46,076 bases of DNA, taken from assembly GCF_001194135.2 (NCBI RefSeq), contig NC_068981.1:171645658-171691733 (forward strand). Direction: 5' to 3'. The notes beneath the pieces were generated by a model. The model had not been told where the DNA came from, ran no database searches, and was given only the letters and a program-made list of their open reading frames with translations. Every line of letters starts with the position of its first letter. Positions within the stretch are counted from its first letter, which is position 1. Shown here one piece after another: positions 2,571 through 42,751 of the stretch. A program made the translations under genes and the position numbers. The stretch comes from Octopus bimaculoides (taxonomy: Eukaryota).

Positions 2571-2910
2571 AATCGTGAAACACTCGAACCCATAATTCAA
2601 AGAGAAGTTTCAGAAAACTCAGTTATTCATTCCGACGAATGGCCAGCATACTCCTGTCTAAATCGTCTAAATTTCTGCCATTCTGCTGTCAACCACCAAA
2701 GACATTGTGTTGATCCAAACACTGGAACCAATACTCAAGCAATTGAAAGAACCAGGTTGGATTCGAAAATTCGTATTTTGAAAGAAATGAGGAGTGAACC
2801 AAAGAACCTTCCAATCTCACCATAATTATTTTTGTTAGCTACAGATGAGGAAGAGTGCTGAAGACGTATTTCTTGCGCTTCTAGCAGATGTTCACTCAAT
2901 TCATCGATAA
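2571..2910 (+). pseudogene. Merlin/ISXO2-like transposase catalytic and C-terminal remnant
   Basis: NRETLEPIIQREVSENSVIHSDEWPAYSCLNRLNFCHSAVNHQRHCVDPNTGTNTQAIER matches Merlin TL.PII...SD.W.AY...VNH...VDP.TG..TQ.IE. A frameshift and a stop occur afterwards. Confidence 0.82.
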
Positions 2911-2954: not shown

Positions 2955-3380
2955 CTCTCTTTACTCTTTACTCTTTACTCTTTTTACTTGTTTCAGTCAT
3001 TTGACTCCGGCCATGCTAGAGCACCACCTCTAGTCGAGCAAATCGACCCCAGGACTTATTCTTTGTAAGCCTAGTACTTATTCTATCGGTCTGTTTTGCC
3101 GAACCGCTAAGTTACGAGGACGTAAACACACCACCATCGGTTGTCAAGCGATGTTGGGGGGACAAACACAGACCGCACAAACACTCACACACACACACAC
3201 ACACATATAAATATATACGACGGGCTTCTTTCAGTTTCCGTCTACCAAATCCACTCACAAGGCTTTGGTCGGCCCGAGGTTATAGTAGAAGACACTTGCT
3301 CAAGGTGCCACGCAGTGGGATTGAACCCGGAACCATGTGGTTGGTAAGCAAGCTACTTACCACACAGCCACTCCCGCGCC
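2955..3380 (-). mobile_element. Full-length tRNA-derived SINE (here family A) inserted in the Merlin element
   Basis: Head rc ggcgcgggagtggctgtgtggtaag..., internal (CA)n/(TA)n tract and (gtaaaaga)n tail. Near-identical to copies at 10305 and 38771. Confidence 0.88.
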
Positions 3381-3543
3381 TCTTCAAATTTTTTATAAAT
3401 TTCTTTGTACACACTTGTAAATATATTTTTTTCAAAATTCTTACTATTTTAATAATAAAACCATGTTTCATTTATCTTAGTAAATAATAATAAGAAACCA
3501 AAAATAAGCAATATAATAATTAAAATATGCGCGTAGATCACAC

Positions 3544-10304: not shown

Positions 10305-10710
10305 CGTGGCTGTGTGGTAAGTAGCTTGCTTACCAACCACATGGTTCCAGGTTCAGTCCCACTGCGTGGCACCTTGGGCAAGTGTCTTCTACTATAGCCT
10401 CGGGCCGACCAAAGCCTTGTGAGTGGATTTGGTAGACGGAAACTGAAAGAAGCCCGTCGTATATATGTATATATATATATATGTATGTGTGTGTATATGT
10501 TTGTGTGTCTGAGTTTGTCCCCCCAACATCGTTTGACAACCGACGCTGGTGTGTTTACGTCCCCGTAACTTAGCGGTTCGGCAAAGAGAGACCGATAGAA
10601 TAAGTACTAGGCCTACAAAAAAGAAGTCCTGGGGTCGATTTGCTCAACTAAAGGCGGTGCCCCAGCATGGCCGCAGTCAAATGACTGAAACAAGTAAAAG
10701 AGTAAAAGAG
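10305..10710 (+). mobile_element. Family-A tRNA-derived SINE
   Basis: gtggctgtgtggtaag A-box, ggttcagtccc B-box, ggcaccttgggcaagtgtcttc core and gtaaaaga tail. Confidence 0.88.
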
Positions 10711-11070
10711 TATACACTTACGTTTCGATCAGTTTGATTCTCGTCTTCTATTGATATTTCTGTGCTTTTTAGAACAAAAATATGAGAGGCTTTTCAACGC
10801 GAATACTGCCGTAATACGGCTTCTAACAATACATCCACGTTAAGGAGGGTATGAAGATTGCCATTCGATATTAATACTGCTTCCTTCACAAATATTTAAA
10901 TCTAAATTAATGGTAATAAATGCTCTTGTACATTTTGCCCCTGACGCATCTATACTGAAAATATTAATCATCGTTTAAATATTAGAAATCATGCTTTATA
11001 TGGGTTTGATTTCTGTTCTACTTATCTGATTTTATCTTGTATATGATATATATTATTTCTTGATTTATAG

Positions 11071-11149
11071 AGCAAGGGAACCTGGATTCAAGCGGTCATT
11101 TGTCCGTATCATCGTATCACATGATGGAGTGGTATTGTGGATACCTGTG
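11071..11149 (+). CDS. Cys-loop receptor exon, loop E region: (x)AREPGFKRSFVRIIVSHDGVVLWIPV
   Basis: Acceptor tattatttcttgatttatAG and donor GTAAGT at 11150. 79 nt, phase 2 to phase 0. IIVSHDGVVLWIP matches the nAChR V.V..DG.V.W.PP motif. Absent from the ORF track. Confidence 0.87.
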
Positions 11150-14100
11150 GTAAGTTTTTTTTTTCTACGAAACCTGTTGTTCTTTAGATTCTTTTACACC
11201 TTCTNNNNNNNNNNTATATAATACACGAAGAAACGAATCCAAAGTAATCTTCCGTTCTTGTTGAGTCAAGAAGAAGAAGAAGAAGAAGAAGAGAGTAGTC
11301 ACGTTTTGTTTAACTTATTCCTTTATTAATTTAATGGCGTTAGTGTTCGCGTATGTATATGCACTTTTTTGTTTAGCCAGAGAGGCAAGGACAGGGCCCG
11401 TGAACCTTCATTTTTGCAGGCCCTCTAAAATTGATGGGAGAAAGAGAGTAAGTTATTCCCAAACCGATGAACTGACCTGAATGCTTGCATTTAGTCAACA
11501 GTGTGAACTCGGCTAAAAGTCCTTTGTAACAAAGAGAGCTTTTAAATAGGGCGATGAATTCGGTCTACCACCAAAAGACTCACAACACAAAACCTCAGAT
11601 AAATGTAACATGTCTCATCAACGTCACTTCGCAGCTTTGGACTGGCACTTCATTTTATCGACTACTAAAGTATAATAAGAAAAGTTGACCTGGAGCTGTG
11701 TGGTAGTGAAAAGAACTTTTTAACTATATGGTCATGCCGATGTCTGTATGAATCTCTTAAGCACAACAATTCCCGCGCTTCTTTGTTAACGTGAAACAAG
11801 TACCTCATCATTTGTAAGCGCATAGCAATGCTCGAATCATCTATTAGCATAAAACGAATGTTGCATCACTTGTGAGCATAGTTTGTAAGCTGATTGAGTC
11901 GTTAGCGTGAAATCTGAACTGCTTTAGATGTCAGGAATGAAATGATATATGAATACATCGAAATATACATAATGGTGTTGTTTGCCTTGAGATATTTTGT
12001 ATGAAATTATGTATTATAAAAGCTTGTTGAATACACGTGTCTGTACATATGCATATACATGTATTACCAAACATTACTCTCATCTTCTTAACCGATGCAA
12101 AAGAGCAATAAACTTTGGCTGTTATTATTAGTAGTCGCTTCAAGGTCGTAAACTGGAAGAAATCTTTAGAATGTCGGGCAAAATCCATTGCGGTATTTCT
12201 TCTGGATCAGTACGTTCTGAGTTCAAATCCTGCCGAGGTCAAATTTGCAATTTATCTCTCTGGGCTCAATAAAATAAAGTACTAATCAAGTACTGAAGTC
12301 AACTAACCTCTTCCTACAAAACTATTAGTCTTGTTCCTAAATTACAAATCATTTTAAGTGTAGTGGAATGGCAGAATATTTTCACGTTGGACAAAATGCC
12401 GTTGGGTATTCGATCTGACTTTTTACGTTCTAAGTTCAAATTTCGCCAAAATCAATTTTGCCTTTCATCCTTTCGGGTCCAATAAAAAAAAATACTAGTC
12501 GCATAAGATCGACCATCTCTTTCTCTTAAAATTGTTGAACTTGTTCCAAAGGTTGAAGCAGTTAAAGTGACGAGCTGGCAGGATCGTTAACGCGTCGGGC
12601 AAAAATGCTTTTGCGGTATTTCTTCCGGCTCTTTCATTCTGAGATCAAATCCTGCCTGTGTCAGCTTTACCTTCTATCCTTTCGGGATCGATAGAATAAA
12701 ATACCAGTCAAGTACTGGGATCGATGTAATCGATTGCTTCTAAAGTTGTGGACCTCGTGCCACAAGTTGATATTATTGCTATGATAATTACGTTGGCTGT
12801 TTAGAATTTGGTTAGTTTGCAACGCACAAGTTGTATCAACCGACATTCAAACAATTCCATAAAACCACAGTCCCTGCATTACTACTTCATCTATTGATCC
12901 TTAAGGGTGAAAATCAATGTTGACCTCAGCAGGAAGTGAACTCAGAACCTAAGGAGTTGGAATAAATAATACAAAGCATTTCATCCAACACCACCTGTTG
13001 GTCTTATTGTTGTTGTGGTGATGGTCATTGTCGTCATTGCTGTTGTGGTTATTGTTGTCACTAAACCCCTGGTTAGCCCTGAGACATTTTAATTATGATC
13101 TTCCCGTGTGATTTTTTTCCTAAATATAAAGAACCAAGAAACAAATTTTTCAATGCACTCCACTTTTTTTATTTTTAGTCATGTTACCGCAGTTGTACAC
13201 GATGTACATATATATATATATATATANNNNNNNNNNNNNNNNNNNNNNNNNNNNNNNNNNNNNNNNNNNNNNNNNNNNNNNNNNNNNNNNNNNNNNNNNN
13301 NNNNNNNNNNNNNNNNNNNNNNNNNNNNNNNNNNNNNNNNNNNNNNNNNNNNNNNNNNNNNNNNNNNNNNNNNNNNNNNNNNNNNNNNNNNNNNNNNNNN
13401 NNNNNNNNNNNNNNNNNNNNNNNNNNNNNNNNNNNNNNNNNNNNNNNNNNNNNNNNNNNNNNNNNNNNNNNNNNNNNNNNNNNNNNNNNNNNNNNNNNNN
13501 NNNNNNNNNNNNNNNNNNNNNNNNNNNNNNNNNNNNNNNNNNNNNNNNNNNNNNNNNNNNNNNNNNNNNNNNNNNNNNNNNNNNNNNNNNNNNNNNNNNN
13601 NNNNNNNNNNNNNNNNNNNNNNNNNNNNNNNNNNNNNNNNNNNNNNNNNNNNNNNNNNNNNNNNNNNNNNNNNNNNNNNNNNNNNNNNNNNNNNNNNNNN
13701 NNNNNNNNNNNNNNNNNNNNNNNNNNNNNNNNNNNNNNNNNNNNNNNNNNNNNNNNNNNNNNNNNNNNNNNNNNNNNNNNNNNNNNNNNNNNNNNNNNNN
13801 NNNNNNNNNNNNNNNNNNNNNNNNNNNNNNNNNNNNNNNNNNNNNNNNNNNNNNNNNNNNNNNNNNNNNNNNNNNNNNNNNNNNNNNNNNNNNNNNNNNN
13901 NNNNNNNNNNNNNNNNNNNNNNNNNNNNNNNNNNNNNNNNNNNNNNNNNNNNNNNNNNNNNNNGAACGAAAACACCTAAAGCTCCACGAGGCTCCGGCAG
14001 GGGATGGTGGCGAACCCTGCTGTACTCTTCCACCACAACTTTCTCTCACTCTTACTTCCTGTTTCTGTTATACCTGTAATTCAAAGGGTCAGCCTTGTCA

Positions 14101-15232: not shown

Positions 15233-18200
15233 CGCCCTCTCTACCATTACTATCACTGTCGAAGGAATCTCTATGGGATCGCTCGACCTATTGAAAATAG
15301 CAGCCAAACCTCTCTCAAATCACATTCCACCGTTTTTAAAATACAAGAAAGGTACATTGGAAAACCTAATCCAAGACATGCATAAAAAGTGATGAGCGTG
15401 AGTAGAACGCCTTTGACCATGATTCTACTTTATTAGGAGTTCCAATGGGGTTGCAAACAAGTGCTACTACCCTCGTATTGCTAACCATCAACCATAATTT
15501 AACCACTACATCGCCAACCTCCAAACACCATACTTATCAAAAATTATAACTTTGTTTCTTCATTATCTCTTATTTATATTTATTATTATATTTTCGTTTT
15601 TATTTTAATATATGTTTATTCTGTGGAGGCGCGTGGCCTTAGTGGTTAGGGTGTCAGCATCATGATCGTAAGATTGTGGTTTCGATTCCTGGACCGCGCG
15701 ACGCGTTGTGTTCTTGAGCAAAACACTTCAATTCACGTTGCTCCAGTGCACTCAGTTGGCAAAAATGAGTAACGCTGCGATGGACTAGCGTCCCGTCCAG
15801 CTGGGGGACACATACGCCATTGAAACCGGGGAAACAGGGCCCATCATAAGCCTGGCTAGGCTTTAAAAGGGAGCATTTATTTATTTTATATTTTTTATTC
15901 TCTTTTCGCAGACCAAATATGAAGTGCAATGCTTTCCAAACACCACTTTCTTCCCGTTCGACATACAGATCTGCTCCTTGATCCTAGGTTCAGAGATTTA
16001 CAACATTCGCCACATGGACATGAATTTTGTCAAACGCCCCATCCCTTCATGGAACATCGACGAACATCCGCTGTGGAAGGTGGAACGCATAACTACCGAG
16101 AAGATCCTCAATAAGTGCGCAGGGTGTGACGTACCCTATGTTAACCTGAAGATAAACTTTCACTTCACACGTCACGCCACTGTTCCTTTCTACACATTCC
16201 TGTTGCCGTGTTTTCTGCTGTCTTCTCTCAGCCTCGTCCTCTTCTTGTTACCATCAGATTTTGCCGACAAAGTTACTTTAGGTCAGTAAATCATGTCACA
16301 TTTCCTGATGCCATCTTTTGTATTGCTTCTGTTTTGATACGTGCATGTTAATCTTGTTGCCAGTAAATCATTATTAAAGGCGGCGAGCTAGCAGAACCGC
16401 TAGCATGCTGAGCAAAATACTTAAGGGCATTTCATCTAGTTTTGAGTTCAAATTTCGCCGAAGTCAACTTTGCCTTTCATCCTTTCGAGTCGATAAAATA
16501 AGTACCAGTTCAAAACTGGGGCCAATGTAATCGACTTATTCCCTCCTCGCGAAAATGCTGGCCTTGTACCAAAATTTGAACCTAATACGTCATTATTATA
16601 GGCAACGAGCTGGCAGAATCATTAGAGTGTCGGTCAAAATGCTTAACGGATTTTCTTTCTGCTTTTTACGTTCCGAGTTCAAATTCCACCGTAATCTACT
16701 TTGCCTTTCATACTCTCGGGGTCGATAAAATAAGCACCAGATGAGCACTTGGGTCAATGTAACCGACTAGACCCGTCATTCAATATTTCAGGCCTTGTGC
16801 CTGTAGTAGAAAGAAATAAGTCATTATCAACATCTTGTAACATTGTTCGTTTTTAGCACGTTATGCTTAGATAACTGTTATTTCTATCTGATTTGTTATT
16901 GCCAAAAACAAGGTACTTGACTGTATGTTTGTTTGGTATCTCCATGTGTATATCATTTTCTTTCATTAACGTGCTATTACCAACTCCCTGATACGTGGCT
17001 GCTGATTGGCTATCAATACGTTAACACCAGTTACTTACTGTCTGTCTGTTATCAATACATTCTAACCAACCGGCATTCGGCAATAATGTATTGATAACAG
17101 ACATTGTGAGGAAAATGTGTTGATTATTGCAACAAAAAGAAAGAAGTCAAAGCAGTGATGGCTACCTATCTATTGGTGAACTGAACCTGGAATAAATTGT
17201 TGCACGTAAGATATCACAAATAGGCTACACAACGGTCTGTCTACAATGACAGGTTTGGAGACTGGATTCTGTTCTAAGACGGAGCGTTTCCAAAATGATC
17301 AGATAACATATTCTCACCAACAGCTTGGTAAACTTGTTAATGTATAATAAAATGTTCTGTCAAGAAATTGCATGAAACGCCAGCAAGGGATTTGGAGTCA
17401 TGATCCACGAGAATGTATATGCAATGTAATTCTCAGTTAAGCAGAAGCATTGTATAATTGAGAAAGTTTGTGGGTGGAGCTTCGTCGTTTGATTAATTAC
17501 CTGTGCGTTGTAAGATTACTCGATCAAGGCTCATCTGGGGCTACAGAATAACAACGACAACGTAGACACTTGATCATCTCACCATTACAAGAAAACAACA
17601 ATCCTATAGCTTTATCAGGAAAAAAACAAATTCGTTTATTAATGAGCATCCTTTGTGTAATGAACTGGCAAAGTCATTAAAAAAACAGATAAAATTCTTT
17701 GGAATATCCATTCCGGTACTCTCCTCTAAGTTCAAATCTTCCGAAGTCAACTTTACTTTTCATCTTTCCTGGGCAGTGTGAAGGTGGAATTGTAAGGGCG
17801 TCGCAAAAGATGCCTTCAGGTGCATAGTTCAAATCCCACTTCCTGTTACCTGATAAAAGTAAACAATGTCACTTTAGTTCTATATTTAAGAGATGAGGAA
17901 TTATGTACATTATTTACATTATTTACATTCGACGGATATTTATGAGGGGAAATATCCGTCGAATGTAAATAATGTAAATAGTGTAAAGAACGTCACTTCA
18001 ATCAGAAGTTGAGATTGACAGATAATACCAATAACAAGAGAGAGAGAGAGAGGAACAGATTCTTTGATCCGATCAGAAGATTGGCTGCGATTTTTAGAAA
18101 CTTCTGTACCCCATCTCTCCGCATTCAGTAAGCTAGGAGTCAAGGAGCAAGCTCGACGCCTGCCACTCAATCTGCTAGAAATAGCGTACCTCGTGCCGTA

Positions 18201-18687: not shown

Positions 18688-19616
18688 CAGCTGTCATGCC
18701 CTTAATCTTCCATTGGTTAAAGGTTGGAAGGCCGAAAGGGTGCCTAAATGTTTTCGGTAATGTATAGGCCCCTAAAGTAATTAGATAAAAGCTTGATACA
18801 CGCTGCCAAGTCGTACACGCTTGCGAATGAGGGTTATGGTTTTGCTAAAGAGTACTTCTGATCTTGACAGCAGACCACAAATTTTGTATAGGGATGTAAT
18901 TAATTCTATTGTACTTCAAAATTTGACACGTATTTATTTTATCGACCAAGGGAAAGTAATAATATCACCGAGTATGATTTGAACCCAGAATGCAAATATG
19001 TGTCAATAAAGACCATTAGATGGCGACGATGACAACGAATACGACGATAAAGATGATGATGATGATGAGGAGGAGGAGGAGGAGGAGGAGGAGGAGGAGA
19101 ATGACGATGACGACGACGAAGATTATGATGACGATGATGATGACGATGATGATGACGATGATGATGATGATGATGATGACATTGGTAATGGCGATGACGT
19201 ATTATTATATTCATTTGTCTTTTATCCAGGCTTCGGATTATTCATGGCGTTCTTCGTTCTTCTATTGTATCTCGTATCAGTTCTACCACCTTCACAAGAG
19301 CTTCCTTATTTTGGTAAGTTACTCCTTTGAAGAATATCTTTTGAAAACGTTTTCGGATTGGCGTCCTTCCCAACCAATTCAGTGTAAACTGCTCTATTAG
19401 CGTAACCTCTGTGTGCGTGTGTATGTTCGTGTGTATCAGTGCGTTTGTACGTGTGCGTAAGTACATACGTACGGACGTATGTATGTATGTATGTATGTAT
19501 GTATGTATGTATGTATGAACATATGTATGTATGTATGTATGTATGTATGAACATATGTATGTATGTATGTATGTATGTATGAACATATGTATGTATGTAT
19601 GTATGTATGCATGAAC

Positions 19617-31400: not shown

Positions 31401-32317
31401 TATTATTTTATAATGGTTTGCTTATTTCAAATAATCATAGAGGCTTACTTGAATCATAAGTGGATGAGTTATTCACTCTCATCAGTCTACCCTTCTTTGC
31501 AGAATCCATAAATACATTTTCTTTCCTTTATCATTTATTGTATTATTCTTATTATATCTAGAATATTTTTGATTAAAAAAAAACATTTAATGTGTCCTTC
31601 CCAATTTATTACATTAGCTAAAGAATTACAACACTGCAGTGTGTCTGTCATGTCAACAGTTTGTTTTAAATGCTTTTTTTTTTTACTACTTACCTTTACC
31701 AATAGATTTATTTATTTAATTACTTTTGTCTTCTGTATTTATCAGTTGTATATATACAGTGCCAACATTTATTTTTTGTATTGGGAATCCATTATTGTAA
31801 CCTATAATTCCTTAATGCAATATATTTGTAACAATCATATACAAAGCCTCACTAATCTAATTTCTTTCTAAAGTATTTCTATACTTCTGTTTCTGTTTCA
31901 CAGATTGTGTTTGATTTCTTTGCTCCAATACTTTGTTTGAAGGACATGGTGAAAAAGAGCAGATCACAATATTTGATTGCAGAAGAGAACAGCTTCCAGC
32001 TCAGCATCAATAATTATTGCTCATTACCAAAAATACAGAACCAAGGAGAAGTTGACAAAGAACACCTCTGTGAAGATGACTTGCCAGAAAGTCTATCTCC
32101 GAGATCAGACTACCAACAAATAGAAGCAGATATTGCTAATATCAGAAGAATTGCCAGTGACTATACAAAGAAGCTCAGTGAAGCAGAATCAGAGAAAAAA
32201 GTATTAGATGAGTGGAAACGATTAGCAATGGTGCTCAATTGTTTATTTTTTGTTTGTTATTTGTTCCTATTTGGTGGTTCGCTCATTGCTTATTTTCTGT
32301 TGGCTTACATCAAATAA
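11071..32317 (+). CDS. Partial multi-exon gene: atypical nicotinic-acetylcholine-receptor-like Cys-loop ligand-gated ion channel subunit, join(11071..11149,15912..16281,19230..19313,21948..22063,31904..32317); 5' exons not visible
   Basis: Manual splicing gives 1063 nt (1 nt + 354 codons incl. stop) with no internal stop. Contains the C-x13-C Cys-loop (CFPNTTFFPFDIQIC), pre-M1 Arg, M1 ...LLPC..., LLPSDFADKVTLG (cf. alpha7 LLPADSGEKISLG), M2-M3 Pro, M3, MX/MA helices and M4. Confidence 0.92.
12165..12775 (+). mobile_element. Three head-to-tail family-B SINEs
   Basis: Three repeats of gttct(g/a)agttcaaat...ttgcctttcatcc...aaataaagtac. Confidence 0.7.
13964..14255 (+). mobile_element. SINE with a conserved central domain (Deu/Nin-domain-like)
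   Basis: tgtggagtgctcagccacttgcacgttaatttcacgagcagg core, with a second copy at 38285-38510. The domain name comes from recalled similarity, not a search. Confidence 0.6.
14696..14940. repeat. (CT)n microsatellite spanning an assembly gap
   Basis: Directly visible on both sides of the N run. Confidence 0.9.
15020..15260. repeat. Degenerate (CAC/CAT/TAC)n low-complexity tract
   Basis: Directly visible. Explains the His/Thr-rich ORFs 14984 and 15099. Confidence 0.85.
15625..15872 (+). mobile_element. tRNA-derived SINE (here family C) ending about 40 bp upstream of the Cys-loop exon acceptor
   Basis: ggaggcgcgtggccttagtggttaggg A-box, ggtttcgattcc B-box and gtgttcttgagcaaaacactt core. Related copies at 18500, 30162 and 37433. 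Confidence 0.82.
15912..16281 (+). CDS. Cys-loop receptor exon: Cys-loop, loops B, F and C, M1 and start of M2 (TKYEVQC...ADKVTLG)
   Basis: Acceptor ttttattctcttttcgcAG and donor GTCAGT at 16282. 370 nt, phase 0 to phase 1. Overlaps ORF 15924..16289. Cys codons at 15930 and 15972 are separated by 13 residues including FPFD. Confidence 0.96.
16379..16820 (+). mobile_element. Two head-to-tail family-B SINEs
   Basis: ggcggcgagctagcagaacc... and ggcaacgagctggcagaatc... heads, each followed by the B-box and tttgcctttcat. Confidence 0.8.
17043..17103. repeat. Perfect 19-bp inverted repeat with a 23-nt spacer
   Basis: TGTCTGTTATCAATACATT (17043-17061) / AATGTATTGATAACAGACA (17085-17103). Confidence 0.9.
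17911..17980. repeat. Perfect 31-bp inverted repeat with an 8-nt loop
   Basis: TATTTACATTATTTACATTCGACGGATATTT (17911-17941) / AAATATCCGTCGAATGTAAATAATGTAAATA (17950-17980). Confidence 0.95.
18500..18645 (+). mobile_element. Degenerate family-C SINE
   Basis: ggttcgattcctggacc...tgtgtccttgagtaagatactttatttcacgttgttccagtc. Confidence 0.6.
18890..19000 (-). mobile_element. Degenerate family-B SINE fragment
   Basis: tatttattttatcgacc...aaagt...tttgaacccagaa is the rc of the family-B body. Confidence 0.5.
19019..19199. repeat. (GAT/GAC/GAG)n trinucleotide tract just upstream of the M2 exon
   Basis: Directly visible. Confidence 0.9.
19230..19313 (+). CDS. Cys-loop receptor exon: M2 pore helix and M2-M3 loop (GFGLFMAFFVLLLYLVSVLPPSQELPYFG)
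   Basis: Acceptor tcatttgtcttttatccAG and donor GTAAGT at 19314. 84 nt, phase 1 to phase 1. Hydrophobic helix with the conserved 23' Pro. The ORF track shows only a different frame here. Confidence 0.9.
19440..19850. repeat. (TATG)n compound microsatellite
   Basis: Directly visible. Generates the MYVC/HTYI ORFs. Confidence 0.95.
20083..20398. repeat. Diverged tandem duplication, period about 164 bp
   Basis: gtgactcc at 20089 and 20253. Both units contain tcaagaaatcttc, attgcagtca, tctccctcaattcatac, tatattgaata and cacagat. Confidence 0.8.
20780..20934. mobile_element. About 155-bp MITE with imperfect TIRs (TTTTAACGT-TATAAGGAACC)
   Basis: Ends ttttaacgtgtataaggaacc / gttccttgtaaagttaaaa. 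A second copy lies at 29975-30128. Confidence 0.65.
20979..21228 (+). mobile_element. Probable LINE 3' end encoding one intact and one degenerate C2H2 zinc finger
   Basis: CGVCQRVCKSNGGLKRHVRIH fits C-x2-C-x12-H-x3-H. Second finger WNLCGCFFETLSGLKSHIRRH has a first-Cys-to-Trp change. A stop follows at 21180-21182. Such C-terminal fingers occur at the end of some RTE-type ORF2s. Confidence 0.45.
21948..22063 (+). CDS. Cys-loop receptor exon: M3 and start of intracellular loop (GIYLCFNLAILTLSTFLNVLVVNLANSHARSKIAKPLRA)
   Basis: Long poly-T tract plus tttacAG acceptor and donor GTAAGT at 22064. 116 nt, phase 1 to phase 0. Lies within ORF 21755..22207. Confidence 0.92.
22522..22810 (+). mobile_element. 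Family-B SINE plus the head of a second copy
   Basis: ggcggcgagctgacagaatcgttagc...gttctgagttcaaattc...gcctttcatcctttcggg. A second head starts at about 22760. Confidence 0.82.
23987..24489 (+). mobile_element. Possible solo LTR
   Basis: TGTGA...TCACA termini, TATA-like tatatagag near 24056 and AATAAA near 24284. More GC-rich than the flanks. No matching TSD found. Confidence 0.3.
24798..25400 (-). mobile_element. Two adjacent RTE-type LINE 3' ends with (GAT)n tails
   Basis: (tca)n-tttaacgtc...ccatgct(g/a)gcatgggtt motifs at about 24800 and 25208. Same 3' UTR as the RTE copies at 41221 and 44340. Confidence 0.72.
25690..25990 (-). mobile_element. Degenerate family-A SINE
   Basis: gggcttcttctttcagtttccatctaccaaatccactca...agtagaagacacttg with a (CA)n tract. 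Confidence 0.68.
27700..28200 (+). mobile_element. Interspersed repeat, probable LINE 3' end with (AAT)n tail
   Basis: GC-richer block ending in caataataataac. No diagnostic ORF motif recognised. Confidence 0.3.
28190..28625 (-). mobile_element. Two family-B SINEs separated by an (AAT)n microsatellite (28412-28471)
   Basis: ggtactta-ttt-atcgacc...gaaagg-aaagt--acctcagc-ga-tttgaactcagaa occurs twice. Confidence 0.75.
29975..30128. mobile_element. Second copy of the about 155-bp MITE
   Basis: ttttaacgtatataaggaaccc ... gggttccttatgcacattaaaa. The internal sequence matches 20780-20934. Confidence 0.65.
30162..30385 (+). mobile_element. Family-C SINE nested in the RTE copy
   Basis: ggaggcatatggcatagtggttagg...gattcctggac...gttgctccagt. 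Confidence 0.68.
31904..32317 (+). CDS. Cys-loop receptor terminal exon: MX helix, intracellular loop, MA helix, M4, stop (IVFDFFAPILCLK...DEWKRLAMVLNCLFF...AYIK*)
   Basis: CTAAT branch-like motifs and acceptor ttctgtttcacAG. Phase 0, 414 nt, TAA at 32315-32317. EW...AMV motif typical of pre-M4. Matches ORF 31907..32317. Confidence 0.93.
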   Translation: MVFDFFAPILCLKDMVKKSRSQYLIAEENSFQLSINNYCSLPKIQNQGEVDKEHLCEDDLPESLSPRSDYQQIEADIANIRRIASDYTKKLSEAESEKKVLDEWKRLAMVLNCLFFVCYLFLFGGSLIAYFLLAYIK

Positions 32318-33406: not shown

Positions 33407-34327
33407 TTGGGTCATCCCATAAATAATGCAGGTCTTTTTATATTCCTTTTATTTTTCAAAATTAAGATAAACAAAGTTCTTTTTTAATCTAATATATACT
33501 CTCCTTTATTTTCTACAATGCTCATCCAACTATCCAGTAGACTTGCAAGGCCCCTCTTTCAAAATTGTCCATGATGAAAAATACTCCTCCAATACTGTTC
33601 TGACCTCATCTACAGAATTCATATTTTTTCCATCCAAATGATTTTGAAGACTGTGGAATAGGTGATAATCAGATGGGGCAATGTCTGGCAAATATGTAGG
33701 GTGAGGCATTGTTTCCCATTCAAACTGCTCCAGCCTTTGGAATGTCATCCTTGCTGTATGTGGACCAGCATTATCCTGATGGAAGAACACCATTCATTTT
33801 GAAACCAAAGATGGTCGTTTTTCTTCTAGCGTTGATTTGAATGACTGGTTGAATGACCAAATCCAAGCTTCTCTGCTAGTTCCTCAACAGTTACGAATGG
33901 AATTTTGTTCCACCAGAGTTTGCAGGACATCCTCTTTGAGTTCAACAGATCTTCCAGGATGAGGCTTGTCTTCTAATCTGAAGTTTCTGGCTCAGAATTT
34001 CTGGAACCACTGTTGACACTGCTTTACACTTATTGTCCAATCTCCATATACTGCATTAATATTCCTTGTACTTTCCATTGTGTTGTTGACTTTACTGAAC
34101 TCATAAAGCAAAATATGCTGAATATTCTCCTTTTTCACTTCCATTATAGCTTTAAAAAATAACTGTTAAACCGAACTGCACTCTTCAAAACATGCACTAA
34201 GAATAAGGACAAAGCAAAATTACTACCTGCTTTTATAGCAAGTTGATGCAGGTAGTTTATCCTGTCCCCCTCTGACTTTTATTTCATGTAATTGAAAAAA
34301 AACCATATCATTTATGGGATCACCCAG
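33407..34327 (-). mobile_element. Mariner (D34D) transposon, internally deleted
   Basis: Imperfect TIRs ttgggtcatcccataaat (33407) / atttatgggatcacccag|TA (34327). N-terminal HTH region MEVKKENIQHILLYEF... starts at 34144. HQDNAGPH to PDIAPSDY has exactly 34 residues between the two Asp. Only 921 bp long. Confidence 0.9.
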
Positions 34328-38510: not shown

Positions 38511-38770
38511 TAGTATGTTATGTTAATTAAGTATTGTGTATGTATCACAGCTGATATATCTTGGACTCTACATACATTATCATGGATCCTATAATGTACA
38601 TGTATACAATATCTTAATGTTTTATGTACCCAGTATTCTACATAAACTACATATTACATGCACTCCATAAATTACATGTATTCTATACATAATAATTACA
38701 TAATACACTACATATGAAATATATGAATGAAACATTTACTTTATTTACATATGTAAATATGTAAATATTA

Positions 38771-39180
38771 GGCGCAGGAGTGGCTGTGTGGTAAGTAGCT
38801 TACTTACCAACCACAAAGTTCCAGGTTCATTCCCACTGTGTGGCACCTTGGGCAAGTGTCTTCTACTATAGCCTCGGGCTGACCAAAGCCTTGTGAGAGG
38901 ATTTGGTAGACGGAAACTGAAAGAAGCCTGTCGTACATATGTATATATATGTGTGTGTGTGTATATGTTTGTGTGTCTGTCCCCCCAACATCGCTTGACA
39001 ACCGATGGTGGTGTGTTTAGGTCCCCGTAACTTAGCGGTTCGGCAAAAGAGACCGACAAAATAAGTACTAGGCATCCAAAGAATAAGTCCTGGGGTCGAT
39101 TTGCTCGACTAAAGGCGGTGCTCCAGCATGGCCACACTCAAATGACTGAAACAAGTAAAACAGTAAAAGAGTAAAAGAGA
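38771..39180 (+). mobile_element. Full-length family-A SINE
   Basis: ggcgcaggagtggctgtgtggtaag head through gtaaaagagtaaaaga tail. Confidence 0.88.
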
Positions 39181-41220: not shown

Positions 41221-42606
41221 TCATCATCATCGTTTAACGTCCATTTTCCATGCTGGCATGGGACTGGACAGTTTGACTGGGGTCTGGGAAGCCAGGAGGC
41301 TGCACCAGGCCCCAATCTGATCTGGCAGTGTTTCTACAGCTGGATGCCCTTCCTAACACCAACCACTCCAAGAGTTTCGTGGGTGCTTTTTACGTGCCAC
41401 TGGCACAGGGGCCTGAGGAGCTGGCATCAACCATGATTGGATGGTGCTTTTTATGTGCCACTAGCATGGAAGCTAGTCAAAGCGGCACTGGCACTGGCCA
41501 TGTTCGGATGGTGCTTTTTACGTGCTACCGGCATGGGGATCACAACTACAATTTCCATTTGATTTGATTTTGATACTGCTGTTGATGTTAATGTACTTAA
41601 CTCAATAGGTCTCCTCAAGCACAGCATGTCACCCTACAATCCAAAGTACTTTTGAGTGGGCTGGTTATGCAACACTGGTGTAGGTTATAGCTGTGGAATT
41701 ACTTTTTTTGCTGGATCTTCTCAGTCACAGCATACTTCCAGAGGTCTCTGTCTTTTGTCACTGCCTCTGTGAGGCCCAACATTCAAAGGTCATGCTTCAC
41801 CACCTCATCCTATGTCCTCCTGGGTCTCCCTCTACCACAGGTTTCCTTCCACTGTTTCTTCACACAGCTCTCCTCATCCATCCACAGTACATGACCATAC
41901 CAACCAAACATCTCTCTTGCACGCCACATCCAAGGCTTCTTATGTCTAACATTTCTCTGAGGTTGCTTACACTCCAGTGGATCATGCTAGCTTCATTTCT
42001 TTCGAGCGTACACATATCTTCAGCACACATGCATCATACAATCTACCTTTCACTCTGAGCGAGAGGCTCTTTGTCAGCAGTAGGGGTAGACGCTTTCTGA
42101 ACTTTTCCCAGGCTATTCTTATTCTAGTAGTAACACTCTCTGAGCATCCACCCCCACTACAGACTTGGTCACCTAGGTAGTGGAAGCTATCAACTGCTTC
42201 TAGTTTCTCCCCCTGGCATGTGAAGGAATCTGTTTTCTGAGCTTCTGTAGTGTTTATTGTCCCTGTGCATCTGCCATCCATAGCTTACACTGGGTACATC
42301 TTATGGAGTTTTTACCTACACCTTTTCTACAGATCGAGAAGGGGTGTGTGATGTGTTCGCCTTCCTACTTACTAGAACTTTGGTCTTTGCAACATTGACT
42401 CTAAGGCCCTTCCATTCTAAACCTTGCTTCCACACCTGAAATTTCTTCTCTAGTTCTGGTAGTGATTCTGGTATGAGGGCCAGGTCATCGGCATAGAGGA
42501 GCTCCCAGGGGCAACCTGTCTTGAATTCCTCTGTTATTGCCTGGAGGACTATGATGAATAAAAGGGGGCTGAGGGCTGATCCTGGTGGACCCTTACTTCT
42601 ACCCGG
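41221..42606 (-). mobile_element. 5'-truncated RTE-clade LINE
   Basis: GSALSPLLFIIVLQAITEEFKTGCPWELLYADDLALI (YADD motif) and EKLEAVDSFHYLGD...RIRIAWEKF...LSLRVKGRLYDACV, followed by the 3' UTR and (GAT)n tail at 41221. Frameshifts are present. Confidence 0.92.
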
Positions 42607-42751
42607 AATATATATGTGTATGTGTGTGTGTGTATGTATGTATATGTGTGTGTATGTGTGTGTGTGTGTATAAACCTATGTAGTAAACATATAGACATAG
42701 CAAATTTAACTATTTCTCCATAGATTGAAAAGAATAGGTGAACAATCTTAA

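What the first reader, a model, noticed from the sequence alone, without database searches (positions are those of the whole stretch)
15912..16281. Orphan nAChR-like channel whose agonist site has lost the acetylcholine aromatic box
Seen: loop B reads CSLILGSEIYN where nicotinic receptors have C.LKFGSW.Y, so the cation-pi Trp (alpha7 W149) is Glu (codon 15993-15995). Loop C reads KILNKCAGCDVPY, with no TyrC1, no vicinal CC and TyrC2 retained. The frame is intact over 353 codons with good splice sites, so this does not look like decay. Known: these residues are required for ACh/nicotine binding, and cephalopods carry an expanded set of atypical AChR-like subunits, some of which are sucker chemotactile receptors. 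Inference: this subunit senses a non-cholinergic ligand or modulates heteropentamers, and is a candidate new sensory or neurotransmitter receptor. Loops A and D lie in exons that are not visible, so the site is only partly assessed.
Basis: partly seen in the sequence, partly recalled or inferred. Interest (0 to 1): 0.85.

Follow-up and report, generated by a model that had tools for sequence, protein, structure and literature searches.

The report
Octopus nicotinic-like subunit without acetylcholine site
This is one exon of an already predicted but unstudied octopus gene for a nicotinic-receptor-like ion channel subunit that has lost almost every residue needed to bind acetylcholine yet is strongly conserved, making it a reasonable but unsurprising orphan receptor.

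Summary
Window 15912-16281 (+) is an exon with AG/GT splice sites that encodes the Cys-loop, loops B, F and C, and M1 of a pentameric ligand-gated channel subunit. The loop B Trp (alpha7 W149) is Glu at 15993-15995. Loop C reads KCAGC, with no TyrC1 and no vicinal Cys pair; TyrC2 is kept.

My 353-codon, five-exon model is 100% identical to aa 84-436 of Octopus bimaculoides RefSeq XP_014777761.1 ("neuronal acetylcholine receptor subunit alpha-5-like"). The exons for loops D and A lie about 11.5 kb upstream of the window. They show W55->Leu and Y93->Phe.

The gene is not decaying. dN/dS against O. sinensis is 0.07, and an Argonauta ortholog is 79% identical and keeps CxGC.

It is probably not a chemotactile receptor. 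Those are reported to be intronless, whereas this gene has at least 6 introns, 5 of them at the positions of a Haliotis alpha-10-like gene. Its nearest relatives are only 31-36% identical.

Loss of the acetylcholine signature is common in this family: 12 of 67 scorable relatives keep 2 or fewer of 7 residues.

Verdict: a real, constrained, non-cholinergic orphan subunit, and a new member of a known kind. Ligand, partners and expression are unknown. Interest is modest.

The parts
11071..11149 (+). 79-nt exon encoding AREPGFKRSFVRIIVSHDGVVLWIPV (loop E region; P0001 aa 84-109). Its first base completes a codon started in the upstream exon.
   Evidence: AG acceptor and GTAAGT donor; 100% match to P0001.
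15912..16281 (+). The exon of the finding (370 nt; P0001 aa 110-232 plus 1 nt). It encodes the Cys-loop, loop B, loop F, loop C and M1.
15930..15974 (+). Cys-loop CFPNTTFFPFDIQIC: two Cys 13 residues apart, an FPFD motif and an N-T-T sequon.
   Evidence: Read directly from the sequence. Both Cys are invariant in 84 relatives.
15993..15995 (+). GAG = Glu at the loop B cation-pi Trp position (alpha7 W149).
   Evidence: HMMER alignment to alpha7 and alpha6. Among 84 relatives this position is W in 73; E occurs only in Octopus, and Argonauta has A.
16116..16127 (+). Loop C tip Cys-Ala-Gly-Cys. The first Cys sits at the TyrC1 position and the last at the second vicinal-Cys position.
   Evidence: CxGC is conserved in O. 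sinensis, O. vulgaris and Argonauta. A disulfide between the two Cys is inferred, not shown.
16137..16139 (+). TAT = TyrC2 (alpha7 Y195), retained.
16185..16253 (+). M1 helix PFYTFLLPCFLLSSLSLVLFLLP.
   Evidence: Pfam Neur_chan_memb; helix 199-221 in the AF2 model.
19230..19313 (+). 84-nt M2 exon, (G)FGLFMAFFVLLLYLVSVLPPSQELPYF(G). Together with the end of the previous exon the pore reads -1' Asp, 0' Lys, 2' Thr, 6' Gly, 9' Met, 13' Val, 16' Leu, 20' Ser.
   Evidence: 100% match to P0001.
21948..22063 (+). 116-nt M3 exon, IYLCFNLAILTLSTFLNVLVVNLANSHARSKIAKPLRA.
31904..32317 (+). Last exon: post-M3 segment, intracellular loop, MA helix, M4 and the TAA stop.
   Evidence: helix 366-435 in the AF2 model.

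Best explanation
The finding is exon 4 of at least 7 of an intact Octopus bimaculoides gene (RefSeq XP_014777761.1, chromosome CM046601.1). The gene encodes a complete Cys-loop receptor subunit of the nicotinic branch.

**Shown**
- The subunit has the Cys-loop with FPFD, M1 to M4, a long MA helix, and an acidic -1' residue without the anion-type Pro-Ala-Arg motif.
- It lacks the acetylcholine aromatic box on both its principal and complementary faces.
- It is under strong purifying selection, with the channel domain most conserved.
- It has the ancestral intron-rich gene structure.

**Inferred**
- It assembles into pentameric cation channels whose interfaces involving this subunit do not bind acetylcholine.
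- It therefore most likely contributes a remodelled orthosteric pocket for a non-cholinergic ligand. The features of that pocket are a CxGC loop C tip (probably disulfide-bonded), the retained TyrC2, and hydrophobic loop D and E residues.
- It represents a loss of cholinergic binding in an octopod lineage that is separate from the intronless chemotactile receptors.
For: - **Identity.** The model is 100% identical to P0001 over 353 codons. Names and accessions come and the genomic position.
- **Family.** Pfam Neur_chan_LBD scores 3.7e-31 and Neur_chan_memb 1.6e-18. The best solved-structure relatives by sequence are human alpha6, alpha4, alpha7 and beta2 (E to 7e-21). By fold, the AF2 model (pLDDT 88.4) best matches alpha7 and muscle nAChR (TM 0.8-0.87).
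- **Site loss.** Shown.
- **Constraint against O. sinensis.** dS 0.118, dN 0.0085, omega 0.07, from 25 synonymous and 7 non-synonymous differences. Omega is 0.11 in the ECD and 0.045 in M1-M3. Flanking introns are about 93-95% identical.
- **Deeper conservation.** Argonauta is 79% identical overall and 94% in M1-M3. CxGC, TyrC2 and the loop D Leu are conserved.
- **Pore.** A-D-K at -2'/-1'/0'.
- **Gene structure.** 5 of 6 intron positions coincide with a Haliotis alpha-10-like gene.
- **Stepwise loss along the lineage.** P0003 keeps W149 and CC. P0002 has Ala at 149 but keeps CC. Octopods have lost both.
Against: - There is no functional or expression evidence of any kind.
- The binding loops are slightly less conserved than the rest of the ECD between Octopus and Argonauta (70% against 80%). 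That fits a relaxed, unused pocket as well as a rapidly tuned one.
- The loop B residue differs between genera (Glu or Ala).
- The annotated Octopus models lack a signal peptide. One search shows this is an annotation gap, but the first exon was not found.
- Unusual pore residues (9' Met, 6' Gly) leave open whether it conducts as a homomer.
Confidence: 0.5

Rival explanations
1. It is an accessory (structural or modulatory) subunit. It co-assembles with canonical octopus alpha-type subunits and occupies non-binding positions in an ACh-gated heteropentamer. There it tunes conductance, desensitisation or trafficking, as vertebrate alpha5, beta3 and beta1 do. It has no ligand of its own.
For: - Both faces lack ACh-binding residues, so it cannot form a canonical site with any partner.
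- The channel domain (M1-M3, 94% identical to Argonauta) and the intracellular loop (omega 0.06) are more conserved than the binding loops (70%).
- The pore signature is the cation type.
- O. bimaculoides has many canonical partners, including an alpha-10 gene on the same chromosome.
Against: - Known accessory subunits generally keep the loop B Trp; 73 of 84 relatives, including beta-like ones, keep it.
- The gene sits on a long branch with alpha-10-like, homomer-type relatives rather than in a beta clade.
- The conserved CxGC and TyrC2 in loop C suggest the hairpin is still under selection.
Confidence: 0.33
2. It is a member, or an intron-containing sister, of the cephalopod chemotactile receptor family. 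On this reading it would be expressed in sucker sensory cells and gated by poorly soluble environmental molecules.
For: - Like CRs, it is a cephalopod nAChR-derived subunit without the ACh signature (PMC11526382).
- A broader 'CR-like' clade is reported in molluscs (PMC13174522), and I could not test membership of it.
Against: - CRs are described as intronless and as a cephalopod-expanded family of up to 26 genes (PMC11526382, PMC13174522). This gene has at least 6 introns at ancestral positions.
- No second pLGIC gene lies in the window or within 10 kb either side of the gene.
- The CR structures CRT1 and CRB1 never appear among the 60 best PDB sequence hits or the 50 best fold hits, whereas human nAChRs do.
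- Octopus carries a charged Glu in the pocket, whereas the CRT1 pocket is described as hydrophobic and aromatic (bioRxiv 10.1101/2025.03.03.641191).
Confidence: 0.1
3. It is a decaying or non-functional gene copy, and the lost residues reflect relaxed constraint.
For: - Many canonical residues are lost.
- The annotated Octopus models start at an internal Met without a signal peptide.
- No transcriptome-derived member was seen in its protein cluster.
Against: - Omega is 0.07 over 351 codons, with 25 synonymous against 7 non-synonymous changes.
- All splice sites and the reading frame are intact in O. bimaculoides and O. sinensis.
- The Argonauta ortholog is full length with a signal peptide.
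- The Octopus first coding exon is open upstream to an acceptor site and matches Argonauta there.
Confidence: 0.03

Closest known systems
Molluscan 'alpha-10-like' nAChR subunits (e.g. Haliotis cracherodii XP_071106607.1; O. bimaculoides alpha-10 XP_052825757.1)
   Same: - These are the nearest named relatives, at 30-35% identity.
- 5 of 6 intron positions are shared.
- The Cys-loop, four-TM and MA-helix architecture is the same.
   Different: - They keep the full ACh signature: W55, Y93, W149, Y188, CC and Y195.
- They carry Ala at -1' in a P-A-K motif, which is anion-type, whereas this gene has A-D-K.
Cephalopod chemotactile receptors (CRT1, CRB1 and the roughly 26 O. bimaculoides CRs)
   Same: Both are cephalopod nAChR-derived subunits that no longer have the ACh-binding residues. 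Functionally, both are candidates for non-cholinergic ligands.
   Different: - CRs are intronless, and their pocket is hydrophobic and aromatic (PMC11526382, PMC13174522, bioRxiv 10.1101/2025.03.03.641191).
- This gene is intron-rich and solitary.
- It carries Glu (Octopus) or Ala (Argonauta) at loop B.
- It is more similar to human nAChRs than to any CR structure in the PDB lists.
Alpo4 from Alvinella pompejana (PDB 8BX5) and other orphan lophotrochozoan nAChR-like receptors
   Same: - Both are isolated, fast-evolving lophotrochozoan nAChR-family members without the vicinal Cys pair and with unknown ligand (PMC10338036).
- 8bx5 is among the PDB hits.
   Different: Alpo4 keeps the key aromatic residues. 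This gene has lost four of the five.
Vertebrate accessory subunits alpha5, beta3 and beta1
   Same: - RefSeq's automatic name is 'alpha-5-like'.
- The subunit is not expected to form agonist sites.
- The pore is the cation type.
   Different: - There is no orthology; the gene lies on a separate long lophotrochozoan branch.
- Vertebrate accessory subunits retain the loop B Trp, and alpha5 retains the vicinal Cys pair (established knowledge).

Membership tests
Cys-loop (pentameric ligand-gated) receptor superfamily, nicotinic branch | Neur_chan_LBD plus Neur_chan_memb domains | tested here: met
   Pfam E 3.7e-31 and 1.6e-18, both above the curated cut-offs.
Cys-loop (pentameric ligand-gated) receptor superfamily, nicotinic branch | Cys-loop: two Cys 13 residues apart, with the FPFD motif | tested here: met
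   CFPNTTFFPFDIQIC at 15930-15974. Both Cys are invariant in 84 relatives.
Cys-loop (pentameric ligand-gated) receptor superfamily, nicotinic branch | Beta-sandwich ECD followed by four TM helices; nearest solved relatives are nAChRs rather than 5-HT3, GABA or Gly receptors | tested here: met
   AF2 model with pLDDT 88.4 and the expected strands and helices. The top 50 fold hits are all nAChRs. In the sequence hits nAChRs rank ahead of 5-HT3A.
ACh-binding alpha-type nAChR subunit | Vicinal Cys-Cys at the tip of loop C | tested here: not met
   C-A-G-C aligns to Y-E-C-C of alpha7.
ACh-binding alpha-type nAChR subunit | Aromatic box (alpha7 W55, Y93, W149, Y188, Y195) | tested here: not met
   The residues are L, F, E, C and Y. 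Only Y195 is kept, and Y93->F is conservative.
ACh-binding alpha-type nAChR subunit | ACh- or nicotine-evoked current | not testable with these tools
   Needs heterologous expression.
Cephalopod chemotactile receptors (CRs) | Intronless gene (retrogene origin) | tested here: not met
   There are at least 6 introns in the coding region. 5 are at the positions of a Haliotis alpha-10-like gene. The feature is taken from PMC11526382 and PMC13174522.
Cephalopod chemotactile receptors (CRs) | Phylogenetic placement in the CR clade | tested here: inconclusive
   No CR sequence could be obtained. Indirect evidence only: CRT1 and CRB1 are absent from the 60 best PDB sequence hits and the 50 best fold hits, while human nAChRs are present. 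The nearest named relatives are alpha-10-like.
Cephalopod chemotactile receptors (CRs) | Sits among paralogous receptor genes (tandemly duplicated family) | tested here: not met
   There is no other pLGIC-like sequence in the 46-kb window. No other called gene lies within 10 kb of the 45-kb gene in either Octopus species. Only this range was examined, and the clustering of CR genes is from my own recollection of the CR literature, not from a paper read here.
Cephalopod chemotactile receptors (CRs) | Expression in sucker sensory epithelium; gating by poorly soluble molecules | not testable with these tools
   No expression or physiology data are accessible.
Canonical non-alpha (beta-type) structural subunit | Intact complementary face (loop D Trp) and placement in a beta clade | tested here: not met
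   Loop D has Leu. In the NJ tree it groups with P0002 and P0003 on a long branch among alpha-10-like sequences. A true Octopus beta-like subunit (P0042) hits human beta2 at E 1e-90, against 1e-19 to 1e-21 for this gene.
Anion-selective molluscan nAChR-like channels | Pro-Ala-Arg/Lys motif at -2' to 0' of M2 | tested here: not met
   The sequence is F-A-D-K, with an acidic -1'. Several of its nearest relatives do have P-A-K.

The most novel reading that the evidence does not exclude
Octopods may carry a second nAChR-derived non-cholinergic receptor lineage that arose independently of the chemotactile receptors. It would be an intron-containing, single-copy, strongly constrained subunit. Its orthosteric pocket would be rebuilt around a CxGC loop C tip and, in Octopus, an acidic loop B residue. 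It would be gated by an unidentified ligand, for example a cationic amine, a metal ion or protons.
Probability: 0.3. Interest if true: 0.6.

Novelty: new member of a known kind. Interest (0 to 1): 0.3.

Why it matters
Cephalopods turned nicotinic receptors into chemotactile taste-by-touch receptors. Knowing whether other nAChR-derived lineages also left acetylcholine behind would show how often, and by which steps, neurotransmitter receptors are re-purposed.

This gene is a clean deorphanisation candidate, for these reasons:
- It is single copy.
- It is conserved across Octopus and Argonauta.
- Omega is 0.07.
- The canonical site is fully lost on both faces.
- Its relatives show a visible stepwise path of loss.

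Against that, it is one of about 78 nAChR-like genes in O. bimaculoides (PMC6896357), and divergent members with substituted binding residues are already documented across molluscs. The finding confirms a known pattern and does not reveal a new one.

Tried and rejected
- **Word-index protein search with the exon alone** found nothing. The exhaustive representative search later found the exact protein.
- **phmmer with M2-M3 probes** gave only noise. A sliding BLOSUM scan then found the M2 exon and the loop E exon.
- **A WxPD motif scan for loop A** found nothing in the window. This was correct, because that exon lies outside it.
- **Pseudogene hypothesis** rejected by dN/dS.
- **Direct comparison with CRT1 and other CRs failed.** CR structures never surfaced in the PDB lists, which show only the best 60. 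P0042, picked as a possible CR, turned out to be a canonical beta-like subunit with introns.
- **van Giesen 2020 (PMC7605239)** is not held.
- **Taxon of the nearest relatives P0002, P0003 and P0005 (Logan transcript contigs)** could not be determined. The run accessions are absent from the paper library and no supplements are held.
- **Gene accessions** are not mentioned in any held paper.
- **O. vulgaris DNA** is not on record. The O. bimaculoides alpha-10 paralog gene is too long to fetch, so Haliotis was used for the intron comparison.
- **The first NJ bootstrap script** timed out. The numpy rewrite hit NaN distances in some replicates, so even the trivial Octopus pair scores only about 0.8. 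Support values are therefore rough lower bounds.
- **ARAGORN** finds no tRNA in the SINE-like element upstream of the exon.
Full report
**1. The observation**

Window 15912-16281 (+) is bounded by ...ttttcgcag|ACC and TTAG|gtcagt. It translates without stops to TKYEVQCFPNTTFFPFDIQICSLILGSEIYN...EKILNKCAGCDVPYVNLKINFHFTRHATVPFYTFLLPCFLLSSLSLVLFLLPSDFADKVTL.

- The exon carries a textbook Cys-loop: two Cys 13 residues apart, with FPFD.
- Pfam Neur_chan_LBD scores E 2.8e-9 on this exon alone.
- HMMER alignments to human alpha7 and alpha6 put the Glu of LGSEIY (codon GAG, 15993-15995) under the loop B Trp of FGSWSY.
- The same alignments put C-A-G-C (16116-16127) under Y-E-C-C of loop C. The Pro-Tyr of TyrC2 (Tyr codon at 16137-16139) is aligned.

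**2. The gene model**

No bacterial-style ORF list or alpha7 tblastn finds the other exons. I located them with sliding BLOSUM scans and by reading the splice sites.

| Exon | Window coordinates | Length | Source |
|---|---|---|---|
| Loop E | 11071-11149 | 79 nt | |
| Cys-loop to M1 (the finding) | 15912-16281 | 370 nt | |
| M2 | 19230-19313 | 84 nt | |
| M3 | 21948-22063 | 116 nt | |
| Intracellular loop, M4, TAA | 31904-32317 | 414 nt | |

- All exons have AG/GT boundaries and compatible phases.

**3. Identity**

An exhaustive HMMER search of 1.84 billion cluster representatives returned a 436-aa protein that is 100% identical over all 353 codons, at its residues 84-436.

- It is Octopus bimaculoides XP_014777761.1, 'neuronal acetylcholine receptor subunit alpha-5-like isoform X1'.
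- Cluster mates at 90% identity or more come from O. sinensis (XP_029645319.2) and O. vulgaris (CAI9716434.1).
- An ortholog in Argonauta hians is 79% identical.
- The window is a stretch of chromosome CM046601.1 of assembly GCA_001194135.2. Window position 1 corresponds to locus L002 position 22540.
- The two exons encoding residues 1-83 lie 11.5-12.5 kb upstream of the window.

So the gene is already predicted in public databases. I found no paper that mentions it.

**4. The agonist site, now complete**

The table uses the full protein and alignments with relatives. Residue names follow human alpha7.

| Loop | alpha7 residue | This gene |
|---|---|---|
| D | W55 | Leu |
| A | Y93 | Phe |
| B | W149 | Glu |
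| C | Y188 | Cys |
| C | C190 | Gly |
| C | C191 | Cys |
| C | Y195 | Tyr |

- The loop E positions are Ile, Leu and Ile.
- Neither the principal face nor the complementary face can form a canonical ACh site.
- Argonauta has Ala at loop B and KCVGC in loop C. The CxGC arrangement, TyrC2 and the loop D Leu therefore date back at least to the octopod ancestor. The Glu is Octopus-specific, one base away from Ala.
- The two loop C cysteines are conserved in all four species. They probably form a disulfide at the hairpin tip in place of the vicinal pair. This is an inference.

**5. The channel**

- M2 reads D(-1') K(0') T(2') G(6') M(9') V(13') L(16') S(20').
- There is an acidic -1' residue and no Pro-Ala-Arg motif, which predicts cation selectivity by established pLGIC rules. 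Several of the nearest relatives do carry P-A-K.
- 9' Met and 6' Gly are unusual. Among 84 relatives, Met at 9' occurs only in this orthogroup.
- An AlphaFold2 model built on an 84-sequence alignment is confident (pLDDT 88.4). It shows the expected beta-sandwich, four TM helices and a long MA-M4 helix.
- Its best PDB fold matches are human alpha7 and muscle nAChRs.

**6. Is it alive?**

I recovered the O. sinensis locus and aligned the five exons. I then computed Nei-Gojobori estimates over 351 codons.

- There are 25 synonymous and 7 non-synonymous differences: dS 0.118, dN 0.0085, omega 0.07.
- By region, omega is 0.11 in the ECD, 0.045 in M1-M3, 0.06 in the ICD and 0 in M4.
- Flanking introns are about 93-95% identical.
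- All splice sites are kept in O. sinensis.
- Against Argonauta, M1-M3 is 94% identical and the ECD 76%.

This is strong purifying selection, which excludes the decay hypothesis.

The annotated Octopus proteins start at an internal Met without a signal peptide. However, the exon is open upstream to an AG acceptor and reads EEQKLINDLMDMYV. That matches Argonauta, whose model has a signal peptide. The truncated start is therefore an annotation gap.

**7. Where it belongs**

The nearest 50%-identity cluster representatives are only 31-36% identical:
- three unnamed transcriptome contigs (P0002, P0003, P0005);
- a Haliotis alpha-10-like protein;
- the O. bimaculoides alpha-10 subunit.

In an NJ tree of 84 representatives, the octopod orthogroup joins P0002 and P0003. 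Support is about as high as for the trivial Octopus pair. The group sits within a loose cluster of lophotrochozoan alpha-10-like sequences, not within canonical alpha or beta clades.

Along this lineage the site is lost stepwise:
- P0003 keeps W149 and the CC pair.
- P0002 has Ala at 149 but keeps W55, Y188, CC and Y195.
- Octopods have lost all but Y195.

**8. Relation to chemotactile receptors**

Two sources, one from the laboratory that discovered them, describe CRs as intronless, a hallmark of retroduplication (PMC11526382, PMC13174522).

- This gene has at least six coding introns.
- Five of them coincide in the alignment with introns of the Haliotis alpha-10-like gene.
- No other pLGIC lies in the window or within 10 kb of the gene.
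- CRT1 and CRB1 never appear among the best 60 PDB sequence hits or the best 50 fold hits, although human nAChRs do.
- The CRT1 pocket is described as hydrophobic and aromatic (bioRxiv 10.1101/2025.03.03.641191). Octopus here has a Glu.

I could not obtain CR sequences for a direct tree, so placement relative to the CR and 'CR-like' clades remains formally untested.

**9. How unusual is it?**

- O. bimaculoides has about 78 nAChR-like genes (PMC6896357).
- A 2026 survey of 3,586 molluscan sequences reports several clades with substitutions at agonist-coordinating positions (PMC13174522).
- Alpo4 is a solved orphan of the same kind (PMC10338036).
- In my own set, 12 of 67 scorable representatives keep 2 or fewer of the 7 canonical residues. 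They come from tardigrade, hemichordate, scallop, nemertean, annelid and amphioxus.
- Loss of the loop B Trp is rarer (11 of 84), and the CxGC motif is unique to this orthogroup.

**10. Mechanism**

The most likely reading (about 0.5) is this. The subunit forms or joins pentameric cation channels, and its remodelled orthosteric pocket no longer binds ACh but serves another ligand.

The main rival (about 0.33) is a ligand-less accessory subunit in ACh-gated heteromers.
- This fits the fact that the pore and ICD are more conserved than the binding loops (70% against 80% for the rest of the ECD).
- It fits less well with loss of the normally structural loop B Trp and with the conserved CxGC hairpin.

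CR membership (about 0.1) and decay (about 0.03) are unlikely.

**11. Verdict**

This is a real, intact, constrained, non-cholinergic orphan subunit. It is also an already predicted gene, and one more example of a well-documented pattern. No evidence yet supports a sensory role. Interest is modest (0.3). Novelty: new member of a known kind.

Noticed in passing
L002 9973-10138 (about 12.5 kb upstream of window position 1): RefSeq XP_014777761.1 and the O. vulgaris model start at an internal Met (MDMYV). The exon is open upstream to an AG acceptor and reads EEQKLINDLMDMYV, matching Argonauta EEQKLISDLTEKYV. The signal-peptide exon is unannotated in Octopus and I did not find it in the 10 kb upstream, which contains N gaps.
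   Followed up: partly
window 31904-31942 (start of the last exon): RefSeq isoform X2 (P0155) uses an alternative acceptor that removes IVFDFFAPILCLK just after M3. The O. vulgaris model CAI9716433 (510 aa) reads through into unrelated sequence instead of M4, which is probably a mis-spliced model.
   Followed up: no
window 2571-2822 (+): An ISXO2-like DDE transposase fragment (Pfam PF12762, E 4.8e-10) lies in the intron upstream of the loop E exon.
   Followed up: partly
window 42319-42675 (-): A reverse-transcriptase fragment (PF00078, E 1.4e-10) lies 10 kb downstream of the stop codon. Adjacent ORFs at 41985-42284 (-) and 30743-31000 (+) look retroelement-like but have no Pfam hit.
   Followed up: partly
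window 20913-21179 (+): A C2H2 zinc-finger ORF fragment (PF00096, E 1.7e-6) lies in the intron between the M2 and M3 exons, ending about 50 bases before the N gap at 21229.
   Followed up: no
window 33533-33793 (-): An ORF with a mariner/Tc1-like motif (HPTYLPDIAPSDYHLFHSLQNHL) has no Pfam hit at E 0.01.
   Followed up: no
window 2964-3381, 10306-10712, 38770-39179: A dispersed repeat of about 400 nt has copies about 90% identical to each other, in both orientations, with further copies elsewhere in the locus.
   Followed up: no
window 15620-15860: A tRNA-like SINE head (ggcgcgtggccttagtggttagg...ggtttcgattcc) lies immediately upstream of the finding's exon. ARAGORN calls no tRNA anywhere in the window.
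   Followed up: partly
whole window: There are 14 runs of N totalling 4,971 bases (e.g. 1239-2174, 13227-13963, 21229-21536). None interrupts a coding exon of this gene.
   Followed up: yes
chromosome CM046601.1 (outside the window): The canonical O. bimaculoides alpha-10 gene (XP_052825748.1) lies on the same chromosome and spans about 280 kb. Its M2 carries a P-A-K, anion-type motif, as do several other close relatives.
   Followed up: no
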